Assembly (NCBI RefSeq): GCF_037042905.1 | Contig: NC_087248.1 | Span: forward strand, 29,450,001-29,514,000 | Direction of reading: 5' to 3' | Length of the DNA stretch: 64,000 bases | From: Lytechinus pictus | Taxonomy: Eukaryota | Part shown: positions 55,651 through 64,000 of the stretch, one piece after another | Position numbering within the stretch: the first letter of the stretch is position 1 | Layout of the letters: each line of letters begins with the position of its first letter | Translations under genes and position numbers: made by a program | The notes under the pieces: model-generated | What the model saw: the letters and a program-made list of their open reading frames with translations, nothing else | What the model was told of the DNA's origin: nothing | Databases searched by the model: none

Positions 55651-55953
55651 GACACAGTGCTTCGAACAGACCGTACTGGTGTTCTCTCGCAGAATATGAG
55701 TAAAAGTTGAATCAGGAGTGAATGGCCATAACATTCATCACGTGGATAGTATTGCTTACAGATCGAATTTGCACTACCGGCCTGCTTACTGACTGATCTT
55801 GATATTATAAATTCAGGATTCTTTATTTTCTGCAGGAGAATTTTCTTATCACAATATTTAGTGAGTTTTCAAGGAAGTAAACATTGCATCGGTTGCTTCA
55901 GATTCAGTGTTTGTGGAATATCTTCACTCCGTTAGACAAACTGACCGCTTTGG

Positions 55954-56436
55954 ATGTTGTATGCAAGCGTTGCCCCGACCAGTTGCGATAGAATGCACCA
56001 CATGTCTCAGACGCAGATCGAGAGCAGCAACCAGCCACTCAACCTTAGCCACCCCTCCAAGCTCAAAGCCAAGCTGTCGGCCCGTCACCACCACGCCATG
56101 ACCGCCGCGGCCCGTTCCCGCTCCCCATCCAGCTCGCCCCCATCTTCCATCTCCTCCACGACCCCATCATCCATCACCAAACCCAAAGCCAGGATGGGAT
56201 CGCATCACCACCACCATCACCATCATCACCACCATCACCACGACGATAAGGAACGCTCCTGCAATTGTCCACAGCTAGACTCGAAGAACACTATCCTCTA
56301 CCGACTCCTGACAGAAGGGTACAGCTATTGGACTCCTGTTTGTTGTATTGGTGGAAAGTGCCACGATGGACACATCCTAGGACAGAGCAAGTTAAAAATT
56401 CTCCTGGAGGAGAGCAAGAGACAAGCAGTGCAATAA
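55954..56436 (+). CDS. NR0B (DAX1/SHP) N-terminus-like ORF: PLNLS, poly-His and two LXXLL boxes; self-contained 160 aa (147 aa from ATG 55993)
   Basis: GC3-rich codons unlike the flanks; SCNCPQLDSKNTILYRLLT resembles SHP CPCQG..PAILYALL and DAX1 GSILYSLL; SKLKILLEE resembles SHP LKKILLEE (from memory); in-frame TGA at 55942 upstream, TAA at 56434, strong donor AG|GTAAGA at 56501/56502. Confidence 0.75.
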   Translation: MLYASVAPTSCDRMHHMSQTQIESSNQPLNLSHPSKLKAKLSARHHHAMTAAARSRSPSSSPPSSISSTTPSSITKPKARMGSHHHHHHHHHHHHHDDKERSCNCPQLDSKNTILYRLLTEGYSYWTPVCCIGGKCHDGHILGQSKLKILLEESKRQAVQ

Positions 56437-56904
56437 GGGCTGCTCCTAGCGAGAATCCATGGGCTAGCGGCAATAAGTGATTTAGGACTATTTATTGTTA
56501 GGTAAGAAAGAAGAACATTTCACTTTTTCCTCACAGAAATGCACTTGTTGTTACAGGCCTTTTAATGATATTAGGAAGGCCACTTTTTTCACACAAACTG
56601 AAGTAGGAATTCATTTAAAACATACTTCTGCAATTTTTTCTGTTCAAAGTGTTAAAAAAGGGCCTATTTGAGATGACTTCACCGACATGACCCATCTTCA
56701 TCAAATGTGGCATCTATGAATCTATCAACTATGAAGCCTTTTTGTAAAACAGTAGATGAATTCCTGCTTTCATCATTTTTTCCAATCACTCTACTGAAAC
56801 CATAAGTACAGTTTTTATGAATGGTTAAAAACGTGTATCATGACATGAATATAGTGAGTGTTTTCTGGACAGACAAAAACATCCAGTGCACATTGATTCT
56901 ACAA

Positions 56905-57110
56905 ACACTACAGATTAAGATAATTATCCCTAATCCAGGGCAGATTACACTAATCCCAATCACATTTATTTTCCTCTAATCACATTCGATTCATTAGCTT
57001 TCCCTAATCCATGGATTTACCTAATGGTTTATTTCATATGGTCTACTATGACAATCATGTGTCATAATCACTAATCCAAAGACTTAGACATTATACATTA
57101 GAGATTAAAG
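56905..57110. promoter_or_regulatory. Cluster of K50-homeodomain (Otx/Pitx/Gsc) sites, candidate intronic enhancer
   Basis: TAATCC at 56931, 56951, 57005 and 57072; AGATTA at 56912, 56942 and 57102; TAATCA at 56977 and 57065. Confidence 0.55.
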
Positions 57111-59214
57111 GAATTGCTGAGGCTTCTCCCTTTGTAATACAAGCTACAATTACACTTTCTATAGTTGTATATATAACAGGATCATGTAATTAGTGAGATT
57201 TGTTAATACATAGATATTAGATACTACATTGTTTCATTGGTGACTATTTTGGTCTTTCCCCCATCTTTCCGTCTTATAAATTGCATTTTATTTGCATTAT
57301 ATTGCAAGATAAACAGTTTTCTTTCTGTTTATTTAAAATGAGAATTTGTTTCATTAACCCTATCTATTACTTTAAACATTTAAGATGATTACCATGTAAA
57401 TAGGAAAAAATTCAACTGAATGAATGCTGTAATGACTAATGGAAACAAAAATCATGTGTCAAAATAGGCCAAAATCTTTATTGATTCATTAAATATGTAG
57501 GAGTTGCCCATCATGCCCACAATTATGGATAACTGAATAAACTGGATAAGTTCAACCCTTGACAAAAATAATATGAAGCATTGGTTAAATTCACATGTGA
57601 AATTCCATTCATACATCATGGTCAATCAACTTGCATTTTGCTATGGAAATGAAACATATATGTCTCATTTGAAATCTGATTTCCCGTCAAGCATCCAAGG
57701 GCTAAAGAGTAGTGTCTTTGCCTGAGGATTTTCAATGTTTTTCCCTTACTAATGTGTATATTTTGCACGGACTCTGGATTATAAAAAAAAAGTGATTTGG
57801 CAGGGCAATGGATGAGGTAATGTCTGCATCACACATAGAACTAAATTTCACTTTCAAGCATACTTTTATTGATTTTTTTTTCAAAGCAAATGTTGAAATT
57901 GTTAATTTTGGTGAGGCTATATAATTCCTGTTAGGTGGGCCTTATTATACTGTTTAGTTAAGCTACGACTCTTGAGTACAAGCTAGCACTTTCTTATGTT
58001 ACATGTACATGTAGGTCTACATATCCCAACTTTGGTAAGCTATAACGTTTCAGTTCGTTAAGAACGGCAAGAGGATTAGACTAGAACTCTCTGCACTCTC
58101 TGAAATGTTTCAACCAACCTATCAGTTGGTTAAAATGTTGCTCGACCAATTGCTGGTTAAAAACAAAATTGCCTGCAGAAAGAATCCTTATATTACCCAA
58201 TAGTTGGCTGGTTCATATTGTAATCAACTTTTGGGATATTAACCATTATTTGCCTAGGGTTGGTTAGAAAATATGCTGAATGAAGCTTGCCCTATCAGAG
58301 GTACACTGCCCCCCCCCCCCTCTTATTTTGTTACTGCTGCTGCTGGGCTTGACCAAGGAAATGACCATATGGTACACTGGTCAATTGACCAATGTACTGT
58401 ATGACCTTTTGTCTCCTCTCTCTCTCTCTCTCTCTCTCTCATTTGCACTCCTCTAGCTCTTTGCTTTATCTTTTCATGTCTGTCCCTCTTTATGTCATTT
58501 TCTCCCTCCCTTTTCTCTCCCCTCATCTTTTCTTTTTCTCTTTATCTTTGTTTCTCTCTTATATATTTATTATCTTTCTCCCTAAACTTTCTACTCTCTC
58601 TTTCTATTTAGTGTTTTACAAGCAAAGGGATGTATAGGTTTTCTTCCAAAGGCCATTTACTTCCTCGCAAATCAACGGGTCAAGGCCGTCGCTTTTAGTT
58701 ATACAGAGCGTTGGAATGCCAATATTCATTTTCAATTAACCAAGGATTAATGGGGGCAGTAGGAGTTGTCATAAAATAACAATAAATATTCATATTTGGA
58801 CAAGCATCTTCTCTTTCTCTTTCCCTCGCAACACACAATATTGCTAAGTCAAATTAAAGTTTGTGATTATTCATTTCCAACAGAAAGACAAAATAATATC
58901 AAGCTAGTCTTTCAGACTCATTTGTATATCCCCTATTTTAAAGGCTTTGTTAGCATTTTATATTGCTCTAAAATTATATGAAATTTTCTTGTCTAAAAAA
59001 TGTACATGTTCACGATAGTACAGCTTTGCTTTTGTGAAATTTGTATTATTCATATACATATATATTATATATACAAAAATATTTATTTAATCATGAAAAG
59101 AGTGTGTATAGAGTTGGTTATGTCAACTGTGTTTATTAATGACTGATTGATTCAGATTACCAAGGCATTGTTTCAATTACATGCATTAAGAATAATAACA
59201 TGTATACATAGCCC

Positions 59215-59602
59215 GGGTAAACTGCCAACTCATCCGCTCACCACATGGTCTACTTTCATTTAGTCTAATGCCATTCAGTCTATCAACATTTCGTCTAACA
59301 ACTGTTTGGTCTTTTAACCATTTGGTCCAATCATCACTTCGTCTAATCACCATTTCGTCCATAACCAGTTGGTCTAATATCCATTTGATTTTCATTCATT
59401 TTGCACAATTTAACGCTCGGTCCAATTAGACCAAATATAATATGGACTAAGTGGCTATTGGACCAACTGGTTATCAGACGGAACGGCATTAGACTAAATG
59501 AAAGTAGACCATGTGGTGAGTGGACGAACTGATGATAGACCAAATGATAGTAGACGAGTTGGCAATTGGACGAATTGGCATTAGACGAATTGGAAATAAA
59601 CC
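59215..59602 (+). mobile_element. GG-terminated MITE, copy 2
   Basis: TSD CATAGCCC at 59207-59214 and 59603-59610; same body as 50196. Confidence 0.85.
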
Positions 59603-60008
59603 CATAGCCCCTTCCCGCCTCATGACCATCATGGCTGGCTCAGATGCAAGAATATCTAATGAGTTCAATAATCAATAGATTATACAGAGAGGAGATTACA
59701 AGCGGATGTAACTCAAGTTATATCAATCCCCACCTTGTGTAGAGAAACCTTGTGCTGCGCTTATCGCAAGGTCGTAGCGCGATTACATCAAGACCAGTTC
59801 TGTTTTGAAATCGTTGAATGGAAAACAAGTCTTTATTGATTACGCGGAGGCGATGAGTTTTCTGGAAATGTTTTCATGATGTCAAGCTCTGGCCAGGTGG
59901 CACAGGTGTTGTTCTCAGGATATCACAGTGACGTTCTCATGTTCTTATTTACATCTGATCAATGTTGTCATTATATATAGTAAACCCTTAATTTCATGTT
60001 ATTTACCC

Positions 60009-60385
60009 TTAAAGATAAATACCAGTTTTGGTAACAATCTCAAAATGAGTTCGAACAGAATCCAATAAAATTACCACCCAAGTGTTTGTATGTATGAATA
60101 GAAAATATGTGCTAAGTGGCTCTGGGAGAAAATGTGTAATTGCTGAGAAATGAGCAAAATAAGCACCGAATTCCATCAAATGTTGGGTATTTTATCCGAG
60201 CAATATTAATACACTGTCCCACTCCCACATATGCTTTCCTGTGTTAGTGATCATCAGAATTATCGCTTTTTAACTAAAATTTCATGACTTCACAAAGATA
60301 AGGATATTTCAATGTACCAGACCTTGATTTTAAAGACTTTTTCATGAAATAATTGTTTGCTGCAACTACTGTCTTTTACATTTAA
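60009..60385 (+). mobile_element. Kolobok-like MITE family B, diverged copy 3
   Basis: TTAA-AGATAAATACCAGTT...TTTAA; colinear with 4417-4811. Confidence 0.7.
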
Positions 60386-61090
60386 AGCTTTAGACAATAC
60401 AAACATTACAATGTAAAACAGTTTTTTGGTCTGTAAATTCTGTTTTACATGGTGTACAGACTTTTTTCACATAATTCTTTTCAAGCATTGTCTGTCATCA
60501 TGAAAAAAAAAGAATATTGCTAAGCTGGTTAAAGCGTAGCAGCTGTGAGAGCGGGAGAACCTTGAATCAAGGCTACTTGTATTCAAGAGGAAAGAGCAAA
60601 TCATAACTATATTTAGTTTAGCCTTCCTTCCTGTTCACCTTGAGTTAAAATCAATGAATACAAGCAAGCATCGATATCTGCAAAACATTTCATTTGATTA
60701 ACTTCTGTTGACTGAAAAAAATAACTGTTGACTGAAACAACATCATGAAAAAAAAGTATTGTATTTACTTTATTTTAAATTTGTACATGAAGTTGAACTG
60801 GGAAAGATGGAATTCAGAACTTTCTCTGAACTGAATTTATTATCAAATAATGTGAAAATACATTGATACAAGGTAAAGTGTCATATACTTCATTGGTATA
60901 AGGACTCCACAGAAAATTATAGCAAGTACTGCTAGTGGGACATGGAACCCTATCCTACAACATAATTAATAGCATGAAATAACGTTTAAAAGTAAGTTAA
61001 CATGTTTATTGTTTGAAGTTTATTATCTATCAACATGATGATACAATCTACATTGTAAAGATGATTAGTAAACTAACCAATTTATGGAGA

Positions 61091-61212
61091 CAGTGTCACA
61101 GTGGCGGGCCGTGACCCAGAGGAGACAAAGCATTGGAGGGGCACTGTATTGTTTGTGAACAATGATGTGCCCCTCCAATGCTTTGTCTCCTCCGGGTCAC
61201 GGTCCGTCACTG
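61091..61212. mobile_element. Near-perfect palindromic hAT-like mini-element
   Basis: CAGTGGCGGGCCGTGACCC...GGGTCACGGTCCGTCACTG; 8-bp TSD TATGGAGA at 61083-61090 and 61213-61220. Confidence 0.85.
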
Positions 61213-61577
61213 TATGGAGATAACAAAATTATTCAAAACATAAATGTGGATAAAAATGATATGCAGATCAGAGGTGCAGCTTTTTTAATTTAGCCCTTAA
61301 TACATGATACAAACATTAAAAGAATACTCAAAGTAAAAATACACCATAAAGATATTGAGCGAATACATTTGATGGGGAAATAAAAGATAAACTAAAAAAA
61401 AAATGATTATATCTTGTAAATTCTTGTTAAAATAGAAGTCACAGGTACACTATTCTCTTTCAGGTGATCCTATTATGTCCATTTTAACATCTCGAACAAA
61501 ATGAATTTTAGAAGAGTAAAGATGATATAATAAATCAAAATTATGCCCCAAACCAATCATTATCAGGCCACAATATC

Positions 61578-61958
61578 GGTAAATTGCCAATTTGTCTACT
61601 GCCAACTCATCCGCTCACCACATGGTCTACTTTCATTTAGTCGAAAGCCATTCCGTCCATCACCATTTCGTCTAACAACCATTTGGTCCAATCATCACTT
61701 TGTCTAATCACCATTTCGTCTATGACCATTTGGTCTCATAACCAGTTTGTCTATCTCCATTTTAAAATTCGTTCATTTTGCACAATTAGTCCAAATTGAC
61801 CAAATGGTAAATGGTCTAAATAGCTATTGGACCAACTGGTTATTAGACGGGAAGGCATTAGACTAAATGAAAGTAGACTATGTGATGAGTGGACGAACTG
61901 ATGGTAGACCAAATGATATAGTAGACGAGCTGGCAATTGGACGAATTGGAAATCGACC
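61578..61958 (+). mobile_element. GG-terminated MITE, copy 3
   Basis: GGTAAATTGCCAAT...AATTGGAAATCGACC; same body as 50196; TSD not preserved. Confidence 0.8.
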
Positions 61959-63685
61959 ATTTTAATTGGGGTAAGTTATTTGGTGGAGGTGGATTATCAA
62001 TATAGCGACAAAGTAATTGTGCTTTTCCATTCTGATCATAAGGGTCTGATTTAAGTTAGACTAAACAAAAAAAATGTTCATGTCACATGTGTTGTTACAG
62101 CTTCTATTTTACTCAAACATAATTTTAGAAGGCCTTAAGCCAAGGCTAACCCTTCTGCTTTCTGGCTCCATGGATGTTGATGTTCATAGTACAGTCCCAT
62201 TGGTCTTGTACTTCAAACCCTTTATACAAAGATGACACCTGTTCCATATTTAGATGATTCTTTTTTATGTGTTACCAGGCAACGATCATGTTAGACAATT
62301 CTAGCCATACACCAATTTTCTTGGGAGAAAACATTCTTTGTACTTGTCAACCTTATGTGTTGTGTTTCTTTCAAACTTCTCAAATTTAAGTGTCTAGAGA
62401 GAGCCTGGTACAAAGACTATTTTATTTAGCCTTGGAGACTGATTTGTGTTCAGTAACACTCCAGTTCATGTTAGCCTGCATGTTTGCATTGTTTACCAGT
62501 CAAAATTAATTAACGTAGAAAGCGCCTCAAGGTTCCTTTCTGCATCAGCTTAATTCTCCGACCTTACATCAGCTTTTATTTTTCCTCCAGGATAGGTTAA
62601 ATCTCCTGGCAGAATATTGATCCATGCTCATGAGTGGAGTCCTTGGCTAGACAAAAGCCTGGCTAAGAGACTAATGTCCTCCTTTCTTTTGTTCTGGAGT
62701 TGAAATCATATCCTCCAATGCATATTCCAAGACATTGTCTTCTGTAAATTTGTTAGAACAAGGACTTACTCCAAACTAATTGATAGATGAGAATAGTCAG
62801 TTTGCGTCAATTACATCTTAGTGCATGTTGGGGTGGACGTCATGTTTAACCTTGTTGTTTAAGATGGTTATTTTTCAGCATGAATTGCAGTGGTTTCTCA
62901 TATTCTCTTGCTAATTGGCCAGGATATTGTCCTTGGCTTGTCATGTCAAAGATGAAACATGGCCTCATTAGACTGAATCTTGCTGTGAGTTGTGATCAAT
63001 TTTCTTTATTTAAAACAAAGTGTACGCTTAATTATTTAATGAAAATTTTAATGAATACAGTGAAGGTCGGCGGAGATGGTGTATATATAGGATTTCTCTA
63101 AAAAGATACTGTTAATGAAAAAGATAACAATATTTGTATACAATTTTTTTCTTCTGTTTGTTACAAGGCATTTCTCACACTTGAATGGGTGATCCTCAGA
63201 TACCCATACTTTTTCAAGTAAAAAGTAAACCAAAATTGCTGATGTGTACGGTTTGGGCCAAACATTTGATGAAGTCCCACGTATGCATCTTTACGTGCAG
63301 TGTGTGCGACTTACATCAAAATGGGAATCGATTTCTGATCATTTCCATCATTCTGAAATCTTACTGGATCATTTCTTTATTTAGAAGTTTGAGACTTTTT
63401 TTCTTCATTCTCATCAATCCTATGTCCAAACTCGGGGCGATTTGATGTCCTGTGAAAAGTGCGAAATTGTCCATTTTCCTTCTTACATTGTATACCTCCA
63501 CTGTGTCGTTAACTTTATGAAGACTTCTGATTTTTTTATTAGTTCCATGATTTTCTCATTTTTGATTTTACCAAGCCTATGTCGATCATGCCATGTTATC
63601 ATGGCTGCTACTGTTGTTTGCCCCCCTGTATTAAAAACGAAGTAATATTTGAATAATTTTCTCCTTTCATTCTCTTCCGCTGCAG

Positions 63686-63930
63686 ATGTTCGAGGGTTGT
63701 CGAGCGCCGGTCTGGTGGAAACCCTTCAGGGCCACACCCAGCTCAAGCTCTCGGAGTACGTCACCGCACTGCACCCCCGGGACCCCCTCCGCTTCGCCCA
63801 CCTCCTCCTCAGCCTGCCCCCGTTGCGTAACGTGCGCCCTCGTGTGGTCACCCAGCTATTCTTCCGTGACCTGATCGGAGAGGCAGTGGAGATGGAGGAG
63901 ATTCTTCAACAGATGCTCCTTGGCGAGTGA
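63686..63930 (+). CDS. NR0B: Terminal coding exon of an NR0B (DAX1/SHP-like) nuclear receptor: C-terminal LBD helices and AF-2
   Basis: Polypyrimidine tract + CAG acceptor at 63683-63685, phase 1 (G|AT). DVRGL...LQGHTQLKLSEY...RFAHLLLSLPPLR...LFFRDLIGEAVEMEEILQQML aligns with DAX1 DVPGL...LQWGTQQILSEH...[20 protein letters not shown] at the same intron position (from memory). TGA at 63928. NR2E/NR2F is the less likely alternative. Confidence 0.85.
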
Positions 63931-64000
63931 TCATCATCTTTGGCAATACCAAGGATGGTTCAGGATCAGAGAACAAAGGATAAATGGATGAAAGACAACT

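What the first reader, a model, noticed from the sequence alone, without database searches (positions are those of the whole stretch)
55954..63930. Split NR0B locus: a stand-alone LXXLL/CtBP-motif small protein upstream of an orphan LBD last exon
Seen: the DAX1/SHP-like N-terminal ORF has its own ATG (upstream in-frame TGA at 55942) and ends at TAA 56434, 65 nt before a strong donor (AG|GTAAGA, 56501/2). Reading through the stop gives phase 2 at that donor, but the LBD exon at 63686 needs phase 1, and the phase-1 frame has TAG at 56483. I found no exon for the central LBD helices in 56.5-63.7 kb or upstream in the window. Established: in vertebrate NR0B1/NR0B2, one first exon carries both the LXXLL boxes and the LBD up to the N-P|D-V-P-G-L junction. 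Inference, three options: (a) the LBD-containing first exon lies more than 63 kb upstream, and an internal promoter makes an LBD-less corepressor peptide that uses the last exon as 3'UTR; (b) the gene lost its LBD core and works as an NR-box-only protein; (c) an assembly or haplotype deletion.
Basis: partly seen in the sequence, partly recalled or inferred. Interest (0 to 1): 0.9.

Follow-up and report, generated by a model that had tools for sequence, protein, structure and literature searches.

The report
Small NR-box protein nested in NR0B
In the sea urchin Lytechinus pictus, the DAX1/SHP-type receptor gene has a 195-kb intron, and a promoter inside it makes a conserved, unannotated small protein with only the receptor-docking motifs, whose mRNA uses the receptor's last coding exon as untranslated tail.

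Summary
The window is Lytechinus pictus C4:29450001-29514000.

**The last exon is not orphan.** Window 63686-63930 is exon 2 of the only NR0B1-like gene found.
- Exon 1 carries the NR box and LBD helices 3-8. It ends ...FFNP with a phase-1 GTAAGA donor and lies 195.6 kb upstream, at C4:29317397-29318129.
- Diadema RefSeq proteins join the two orthologous exons, in genes of 118-147 kb.
- The L. pictus interval has no N.

**The small ORF (55954-56436) is a real, conserved coding gene.**
- Homologues have invariant QPLNL..PSK.KAK, CxCP..DSK..ILYRLLT and SKLK[IL]LLE blocks and a conserved stop position.
- dN/dS is 0.04.

**Its transcript structure:**
- L. pictus transcriptome contigs cover 55713-56501 and leave the genome exactly at the predicted donor.
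- A spliced mRNA contig from a related urchin joins that donor to the 63686 acceptor.
- In-frame stops lie between the ORF and the junction, so the NR0B last exon is 3'UTR for this mRNA.

The motif CxCP-x7-ILYxLL occurs only twice in the 812-Mb genome: in NR0B exon 1 and in this ORF.

That the protein binds nuclear receptors, as an LBD-less NR0B-like adaptor, is inferred and not tested.

The parts
55713..56501 (+). First (5') exon of the small-protein mRNA. The 5' end is at or slightly upstream of 55713; the 3' end is at the donor.
   Evidence: Contigs of two L. pictus transcriptome studies (X1, X15) cover 55713-56198 and 56250-56501. Both start at 55713. Both stop fitting the genome at 56501, with 8 and 28 further letters. 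Depth is about 0 in flanking intron bins. Stranded raw reads have the first mate on '-' only, so the RNA is + strand. L011 is colinear over 55700-55756 and 55852-56501.
55954..56436 (+). CDS of the small protein (160 aa including the urchin-specific 13-aa N-extension). The alternative conserved start MHHMSQ is at 55993. Stop is TAA at 56434-56436.
   Evidence: ORF. Homologues; alignments A2 and A5. dN/dS 0.042 against L011, with the stop at the same position (TAG there).
56032..56073 (+). Invariant N-terminal block QPLNLSHPSKLKAK: a CtBP-like PLNLS followed by a basic stretch.
   Evidence: Invariant columns Q-P-L-N-L..P-S-K.K-A-K in nine homologues. No non-synonymous change in the first 35 codons against L011.
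56203..56241 (+). Run of 13 His codons.
   Evidence: Translation. The repeat breaks the transcript contigs at 56199-56249. The run is present in the urchin homologues, and independent His runs occur in P0025.
56260..56310 (+). NR0B-type box 1: CNCPQLDSKNTILYRLL (LXXLL).
   Evidence: One of only two genome-wide matches to CxCP-x7-ILYxLL; the other is NR0B exon 1. Invariant in all homologues. Predicted helix.
56386..56418 (+). Box 2: SKLKILLEESK (second LXXLL), just before the C-terminus.
   Evidence: Invariant SKLK.LLE block. It is the best-predicted helix, pLDDT about 82. It resembles the SILKKIL box of mouse SHP visible in the PDB alignment.
56437..56501 (+). 65-nt untranslated spacer between the stop and the donor. 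Its last 37 nt (56465-56501) are almost invariant.
   Evidence: There is a 1-nt indel against L011, and several stops in the ORF frame in L011, so it is not coding. 36 of the last 37 nt are identical, against about 57% in the first 28 nt.
56502..63685 (+). Intron of the small-protein transcript (7184 nt), GT..AG. It is also the 3' end of the 195.6-kb NR0B intron.
   Evidence: The L011 mRNA joins ...TTATTATTAG|ATGTTCGAGG, equivalent to window 56501|63686. No joint from 56501 lands inside 56502-61300.
63686..63930 (+). Coding part of the shared last exon. It is LBD helices 9-12 plus AF-2 of NR0B (phase-1 acceptor, stop TGA 63928-63930), and 3'UTR of the small-protein mRNA.
   Evidence: PDB hits: COUP-TF2 1.5e-12, DAX1 2.3e-6. 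92% identical to the C-terminus of Diadema NR0B1-like X1. dN/dS 0.041 in the LBD frame, and the other frames are not conserved. Held by the same transcriptome runs as the small-ORF exon.
63931..64000 (+). Start of the common 3'UTR. It continues beyond the window; the first AATAAA/ATTAAA is about 0.8 kb downstream.
   Evidence: 55% identity to L011 after the NR0B stop. Poly(A)-signal scan of window plus L025.

Best explanation
One transcription unit makes two unrelated-length proteins.

(1) The L. pictus NR0B (DAX1/SHP-type) gene has two coding exons.
- Exon 1 lies at C4:29317397-29318129, outside the window. It encodes the CxC...ILYxLL box and LBD helices 3-8.
- The last exon is window 63686-63930 and encodes helices 9-12.
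- A 195.6-kb phase-1 intron separates them. The predicted protein is about 325 aa.

(2) A start site at or near 55713, 7.2 kb upstream of the last exon and inside that intron, drives a second mRNA.
- Its first exon (55713-56501) contains a complete conserved ORF of 147-160 aa.
- It is then spliced 56501>63686. The NR0B last exon is therefore read only as 3'UTR.

Inferred, not shown:
- The small protein is mostly disordered. It carries an NR0B-type box 1 (ILYRLL), a second LXXLL helix (LKILLEE), a PLNL-PSKxKAK block and, in urchins, a poly-His tract.
- It most likely docks on the coactivator groove of nuclear-receptor LBDs. It would then act as an LBD-less, NR0B-like competitor or corepressor adaptor, a 'microprotein' of the NR0B family.
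- It probably arose from, or shares an origin with, the N-terminal part of NR0B exon 1.
For: **NR0B gene**
- A PF00104 scan finds an LBD-core open frame at C4:29317688-29318143.
- Its sequence ends STIFFNP|G gtaaga.
- Its best PDB matches are DAX1 (6e-17) and SHP (3.5e-11), both ending at ...FNP.
- It is the only such exon found in the genome, and there is only one matching last exon on C4.
- Diadema antillarum and D. setosum proteins of 334 aa read FFNP|DVRGLCSAGLVETLQGH.... Their genes span 147 and 118 kb.
- There is no N in 224 kb around the locus.
- The last exon has dN/dS 0.04 in the LBD frame.

**Small protein**
- Nine homologues share three invariant blocks and the stop position.
- dN/dS is 0.042 with dS 0.95.
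- The exon is transcribed from the + strand, and the contigs leave the genome at 56501.
- The spliced contig L011 joins the donor and acceptor to the base, with stops in between.

**Relation to NR0B**
- CxCP-x7-ILYxLL occurs exactly twice in the genome, in these two exons, which lie on the same strand 189 kb apart.
- The two LXXLL segments are predicted helices in an otherwise low-confidence model.
Against: - No read in L. pictus itself was shown to span 56501>63686 or exon 1>63686.
- RefSeq models of NR0B in Lytechinus and Strongylocentrotus stop by intron read-through (252-294 aa). Full-length NR0B mRNA may therefore be rare there.
- Homology between the small protein and NR0B rests on one 9-residue motif plus linkage. 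BLASTP gives E = 0.3 and hhalign gives no alignment.
- In a more distant homologue's mRNA (L004), the 3'UTR has no LBD-like exon, so the shared-exon layout is not universal.
- Binding to receptors or to CtBP is untested.
Confidence: 0.75

Rival explanations
1. The small protein is a real, conserved gene but is unrelated to NR0B by descent. It merely sits in the NR0B intron and borrows its terminal exon and poly(A) site. The shared CxC...ILYxLL motif is convergent, or reflects another function such as a Cys/His metal-binding or nucleic-acid-binding module.
For: No profile-level similarity beyond the motif. No Pfam, PDB or Atlas relative. Conserved Cys and His after box 1. The distant homologue's mRNA lacks an LBD exon in its 3'UTR.
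Against: The motif occurs only twice in 812 Mb, and both copies are in this locus, on one strand, in first exons that use the same acceptor. The order of box 1 and then a LK(K)ILL box mirrors SHP.
Confidence: 0.2
2. The exon-B transcript is mainly a regulatory, non-productive isoform of the NR0B locus. It could act by promoter competition, or as an NMD target, because the stop lies 65 nt before the last junction. On this reading the peptide is incidental.
For: The stop lies 64-65 nt upstream of the exon junction in two species. A 37-nt near-invariant element ends the exon. The terminal exon is shared.
Against: dN/dS is 0.04 over the ORF with saturated synonymous change. The stop position is conserved although the stop codon differs. 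Homologues are conserved as stand-alone ORFs on other contigs.
Confidence: 0.04
3. Assembly or haplotype artefact: the 195 kb between exon 1 and the last exon, or the loss of an LBD core next to the small ORF, is a mis-join or deletion.
For: None found. RefSeq failed to link the exons in three camarodont species.
Against: No N in 224 kb. Diadema shows the same long-gene layout. An independent spliced mRNA from another species has the same ORF, stop and junction. The ORF architecture is conserved in distant homologues.
Confidence: 0.01

Closest known systems
NR0B1 (DAX1) and NR0B2 (SHP), including invertebrate NR0B1/2 (molluscs, Platynereis; PMC4388693, PMC13012086)
   Same: The host gene is a member. 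It has no DBD, an N-terminal CxC...ILYxLL box, an LBD most similar to DAX1 and SHP, and the same NP|DV.GL phase-1 intron. The small protein shares box 1 and a LK(K)ILL-type box 2 in the same order.
   Different: The small protein has no LBD at all (no PF00104 hit) and ends at a conserved stop. The host gene's single intron is 118-195 kb in sea urchins.
Truncated NR0B isoforms such as human DAX-1A (exon 1 plus an alternative short last exon; from my own knowledge, not checked here)
   Same: The NR0B locus gives products that lack LBD helices 9-12. Urchin RefSeq models of 252-305 aa are of this kind.
   Different: Those isoforms keep exon 1 with LBD helices 3-8. Here a different first exon encodes an independent 147-160-aa protein, and the LBD exon is untranslated.
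LXXLL NR-box cofactors (p160/SRC box 2 'ILHRLL', RIP140) and CtBP-recruiting PxDLS corepressors (from my own knowledge)
   Same: Short amphipathic LXXLL helices in a disordered protein. A PLNLS motif in urchins fits the P-x-[DN]-L-S type.
   Different: About 105-160 aa in total, with no other domains. The PLNL block is followed by V or A outside urchins and is part of a longer invariant block. Binding was not tested.
MicroProteins and shared-exon loci (Id/LITTLE ZIPPER-type dominant negatives; INK4a/ARF or GNAS-type loci with alternative first exons; from my own knowledge)
   Same: A small protein keeps only the interaction motif of a larger regulator. It is made from an alternative first exon and promoter that splices to the host gene's downstream exon.
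   Different: Here the shared exon is not translated at all in the second mRNA. The relation to the host protein is limited to one motif.

Membership tests
NR0B (DAX1/SHP) - host gene (exon 1 upstream plus window last exon) | LBD most similar to DAX1/SHP, with no DNA-binding domain in the coding exons | tested here: met
   Exon 1's best PDB hits are DAX1 (6.2e-17) and SHP (3.5e-11). RefSeq names the orthologues NR0B1-like. Full-length Diadema P0004 scores 60.4 bits on PF00104 and hits no DBD family.
NR0B (DAX1/SHP) - host gene | N-terminal CxC-x8-ILYxLL NR box | tested here: met
   QCDCPEKMNHHSILYTLL in L001. It is conserved in urchin and Saccoglossus proteins.
NR0B (DAX1/SHP) - host gene | Single conserved phase-1 intron at ...FNP|DV.GL... 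| tested here: met
   Donor CCAG|GTAAGA after FFNP+G. The acceptor at 63686 needs one base. Diadema proteins read FFNP|DVRGL.
NR0B (DAX1/SHP) - host gene | Transcript joining exon 1 to the last exon in L. pictus itself | not tested
   Only comparative evidence (Diadema models) and coding-frame conservation of the last exon.
NR0B - small protein (window 55954-56436) | Nuclear-receptor ligand-binding domain | tested here: not met
   No PF00104 hit at E<=10 for the L. pictus protein or five homologues. The protein ends at a conserved stop 41-46 residues after box 1. It is therefore not filed as an NR0B member.
NR0B - small protein | NR0B-type box CxC-x8-ILYxLL | tested here: met
   CNCPQLDSKNTILYRLL. 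It is one of only two genome-wide matches; the other is NR0B exon 1.
LXXLL NR-box cofactor | LXXLL in an amphipathic helix that binds the AF-2 groove of a receptor LBD | tested here: inconclusive
   Two LXXLL motifs lie in predicted helices, residues 54-63 and 90-103 of P0008. Binding is not measurable with these tools.
CtBP-binding corepressor | P-x-[DN]-L-[ST] motif | tested here: inconclusive
   PLNLS in the three urchin sequences, but PLNLV or PLNLA in the six others. The invariant block is longer (QPLNL..PSK.KAK), so another partner or a nuclear localisation signal is possible.
Any described protein family (Pfam, PDB, ESM Atlas clusters) | Significant profile or sequence match | tested here: not met
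   Pfam gives nothing above noise. A PDB profile search gives 0 hits at E<=10. The best Atlas score is 0.80. Only four clusters were found among 1.84 billion representatives, none named.

The most novel reading that the evidence does not exclude
The small protein is an ancient, stand-alone 'NR-box-only' relative of NR0B, a single DAX1-repeat-like unit plus an SHP-like second box. It is conserved across marine invertebrates. It would be either the free-living ancestor of the NR0B N-terminal domain (NR0B formed when such an exon was joined to an NR2-type LBD), or a dedicated antagonist or partner of NR0B whose expression is coupled to it through the shared terminal exon.
Probability: 0.25. Interest if true: 0.85.

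Novelty: new variant of a known kind. Interest (0 to 1): 0.66.

Why it matters
- It corrects the gene model of the sea-urchin NR0B receptor. RefSeq proteins of Lytechinus and Strongylocentrotus lack helices 9-12 because the last exon lies 195 kb away.
- It uncovers an unannotated, strongly constrained small protein that carries only the receptor-docking boxes of DAX1/SHP. If it binds receptors, it is a natural LBD-less corepressor or competitor in a classic developmental model. It would also give a concrete handle on how the DBD-less NR0B family acquired its unusual N-terminus.
- The locus is a clean example of one terminal exon serving as coding sequence for one protein and as 3'UTR for another.

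Tried and rejected
**Searches and tests that gave nothing**
- Complex prediction of the small protein's C-terminal 61 aa with the Diadema NR0B LBD gave no verdict (score 0.00). This is not evidence either way.
- hhalign of the small-protein alignment against the NR0B alignment gave no usable alignment. BLASTP found only the 15-residue box, E = 0.3.
- ESM Atlas, the PDB profile search and Pfam found no relatives.
- The PDB hits of the whole ORF were His-tag artefacts.
- A third homologue search, with the C-terminal 61 aa, was meant to fish out transcript fragments. It found nothing new.
- The alternative C-terminal tails of Diadema isoforms X2 and X3 have no counterpart in the window. The L. 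variegatus 294-aa tail is intron read-through.

**Readings rejected**
- Read-through or frameshift from the small ORF into the LBD exon. There are several stops in the ORF frame in L011 and a TAG in the LBD frame at 56483. A 1-nt indel between species changes the phase.
- Translation of other frames of the last exon. They are not conserved.
- Hidden LBD-core exons in the window or the 195-kb intron. None were found.

**Left unresolved**
- The acceptor-like site at 55836/7 is not the exon start, because contigs begin at 55713.
- Both contigs begin at the same base. That is also what a de Bruijn branch would give if some transcripts spliced an upstream exon ending in CAG onto an acceptor at 55715/6.
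- The 28-letter overhang past 56501 in X15 equals what k=31 unitigs give when the downstream exon is shared with molecules preceded by [not T]AG. This is consistent with the 63686 acceptor but does not discriminate.
- The S. purpuratus contigs carrying the 252-aa product could not be assigned to RNA or DNA.
Full report
**1. The observation**

- The + strand ORF 55954-56436 has an in-frame TGA at 55942 upstream and ends in TAA at 56434.
- 65 nt later comes AG|GTAAGA at 56501/2.
- The acceptor ctgcag|ATGTTCGAGG at 63685/6 opens an LBD-like frame that needs one base from the preceding exon. That frame runs to TGA at 63928.
- The last exon alone is a weak Pfam hit (PF00104, 15.6 bits). It is a clear helix 9-12 match to solved LBDs: COUP-TF2 1.5e-12, DAX1 2.3e-6.
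- No LBD-core exon lies in the window.

**2. Where the rest of the receptor is**

The window is C4:29450001-29514000 of an 812-Mb genome. Protein names identify the species as Lytechinus pictus.

- The PF00104 scan found an LBD-core open frame on the same strand at C4:29317688-29318143.
- Read out (L001), it is a typical NR0B first coding exon: MMSAK...QCDCPEKMNHHSILYTLL...LBD helices 3-8...EFAYLKSTIFFNP, then G|GTAAGA. That is a phase-1 donor exactly at the vertebrate NP|DV.GL junction.
- Its best solved relatives are DAX1 (6e-17) and SHP (3.5e-11), and both alignments end at ...FNP.
- Genome-wide it is the only exon of this kind found. The window's last exon is the only matching last exon on this chromosome arm.
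- The RefSeq proteins of L. pictus (252 aa), S. purpuratus (252 aa) and L. variegatus (294 aa) are this exon plus intron read-through.
- Diadema antillarum and D. setosum have 334-aa models reading ...STIFFNP|DVRGLCSAGLVETLQGHTQLKLSEY.... The part after the junction is 92% identical to window 63685-63921. Those genes span 147 and 118 kb.
- The 224 kb from C4:29300001 to 29524000 contains no N, and tblastn of NR0B queries finds no further NR0B exon there.

The last exon is therefore exon 2 of an intact NR0B gene with a 195.6-kb intron. It is not an orphan, and an assembly deletion is unlikely.

**3. What the small ORF is**

It is a conserved protein.
- Searches found P0006 (another urchin), P0007-P0009 (marine metatranscriptome or Logan contigs), P0024/P0025 (marine metagenomes), and L011 and L013.
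- All are about 105-160 aa and share three invariant blocks: QPLNL..PSK.KAK..AR; C.CP..DSK..ILYRLLT; and SKLK[IL]LLE..K...V.
- All end within a few residues of the same point.
- None has a name, a Pfam family, or a PDB or Atlas relative.
- Against the L011 orthologue, dN/dS is 0.042 with dS of about 0.95. The stop is at the same codon but is TAG instead of TAA.
- AlphaFold gives a mostly disordered chain (mean pLDDT 55) with helices over KAK..ARA, ILYRLL and KLKILLEESKK.

**4. Transcript structure**

- In L. pictus, contigs from two transcriptome studies cover 55713-56198 and 56250-56501. The gap is the His-codon repeat.
- Both contigs begin at 55713. Both stop matching at 56501 while running on for 8 and 28 letters.
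- Neighbouring intron bins have no depth, which also shows that these runs are RNA.
- Stranded raw reads put the RNA on the + strand.
- No joint from 56501 lands within 56502-61300.
- The same runs hold the last exon.
- The link itself is seen in L011, a 1398-nt contig from a related urchin. L011 247-912 aligns to window 55852-56501 (80.7%), and L011 913-1157 aligns to window 63686-63930 (90.7%).
- The junction ...TTATTATTAG|ATGTTCGAGG falls to the base on the predicted donor and acceptor.
- Between the stop and the junction there are several in-frame stops and a 1-nt indel between species. No read-through product can therefore reach the LBD frame.
- The LBD frame of the last exon is nevertheless under strong constraint: dN/dS 0.041, with the other frames unconstrained. 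It must be translated from the NR0B mRNA.

**5. Relation between the two proteins**

- Written as degenerate DNA, CxCP-x7-ILYxLL occurs exactly twice in the genome: in NR0B exon 1 (C4:29317448) and in the small ORF (C4:29506260). Both are on the + strand. The reversed control gives 0 and 1.
- Both exons are first coding exons that use the same acceptor.
- The second box (KLKILLEE) recalls the SILKKIL box of SHP, visible.
- Beyond this, sequence statistics give no support for homology. Common descent by partial duplication of exon 1 is a reasonable inference, not a demonstration.
- In a distant homologue's 2.7-kb mRNA (L004) the 3'UTR has no LBD-like sequence. The shared-exon layout may therefore be echinoid-specific.

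**6. Mechanism**

Shown:
- two promoters or first exons and one shared terminal exon;
- two constrained coding sequences;
- the LBD exon untranslated in the small-protein mRNA.

Inferred:
- the small protein uses its two LXXLL helices to occupy the AF-2 groove of nuclear receptors, as DAX1 and SHP boxes do;
- its PLNL/basic block recruits a corepressor or directs nuclear import;
- it therefore acts as an LBD-less NR0B-like repressor or competitor.

**7. Comparison with what is known, and novelty**

- Invertebrate NR0B genes are known (PMC4388693, PMC13012086).
- I found no description of an LBD-less NR0B-like small protein or of this nested arrangement. Full-text searches for the invariant peptide strings returned nothing relevant.
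- I file the host gene as a member of NR0B.
- I file the small protein as a new variant, an NR-box-only relative. It is not an NR0B member, because the defining LBD was tested and is absent.

**8. Verdict**

- Observation: confirmed.
- Architecture: high confidence.
- Function: moderate confidence.

Noticed in passing
L001:7397-8152 (C4:29317397-29318152), outside the window: RefSeq NR0B1-like proteins of L. pictus (252 aa), S. purpuratus (252 aa) and L. variegatus (294 aa) are exon 1 plus intron read-through and lack LBD helices 9-12. The true last exon lies 195.6 kb downstream in L. pictus. Only the Diadema models (334 aa) are complete.
   Followed up: yes
window 6094-59774: The NR5A/ERR-type half-site CAAGGYCR occurs 22 times, against 5.1 +/- 2.2 in shuffles (none of 100 reached 22). 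Two sites (55132, 55291) lie 420-580 bp upstream of the small-protein transcript start. I did not check whether the sites sit in repeats.
   Followed up: partly
window 56465-56501: The last 37 nt of the small-ORF exon (GCGGCAATAAGTGATTTAGGACTATTTATTGTTAG region) are 36/37 identical to the L011 species. The 5'UTR is 60% identical and the CDS 83%. This may be a conserved splicing or post-transcriptional element.
   Followed up: partly
window 59100-59700, 59900-60500, 61100-61300: Intronic segments have contig depths in the thousands and many variant letters and loose ends in all four RNA runs. They look like transcribed interspersed repeats. Related ORF fragments recur on both strands at 59.2-59.7 and 61.5-62.0 kb.
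   Followed up: no
window 56203-56241; P0025: The small protein has a 13-His tract in urchins. Independently placed His runs occur in the distant homologue P0025, which hints that a His-rich linker is itself selected.
   Followed up: no
window 63686-63930 vs 55954-56436: Synonymous divergence from L011 is half as large in the last exon (dS 0.42) as in the small ORF (dS 0.95). This would fit an extra constraint on an exon that is both coding and 3'UTR, but it is a single pairwise comparison.
   Followed up: no
window 55713-55716: Contigs of two studies start at the same base, 55713 (CAG|G). This could be a sharp start site. It could also be a de Bruijn branch caused by an upstream exon ending in CAG (NR0B exon 1 ends ...CCAG) splicing to 55716. 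That splice would give a truncated NR0B with the small ORF as a downstream cistron. L011 is colinear with the genome through this point.
   Followed up: partly
P0010, P0011, P0013 (Diadema antillarum): Diadema NR0B has RefSeq isoforms in which exon 1 is joined to other short terminal exons (278 and 305 aa). The giant intron therefore harbours further alternative exons. None is conserved at protein level in the L. pictus window.
   Followed up: partly
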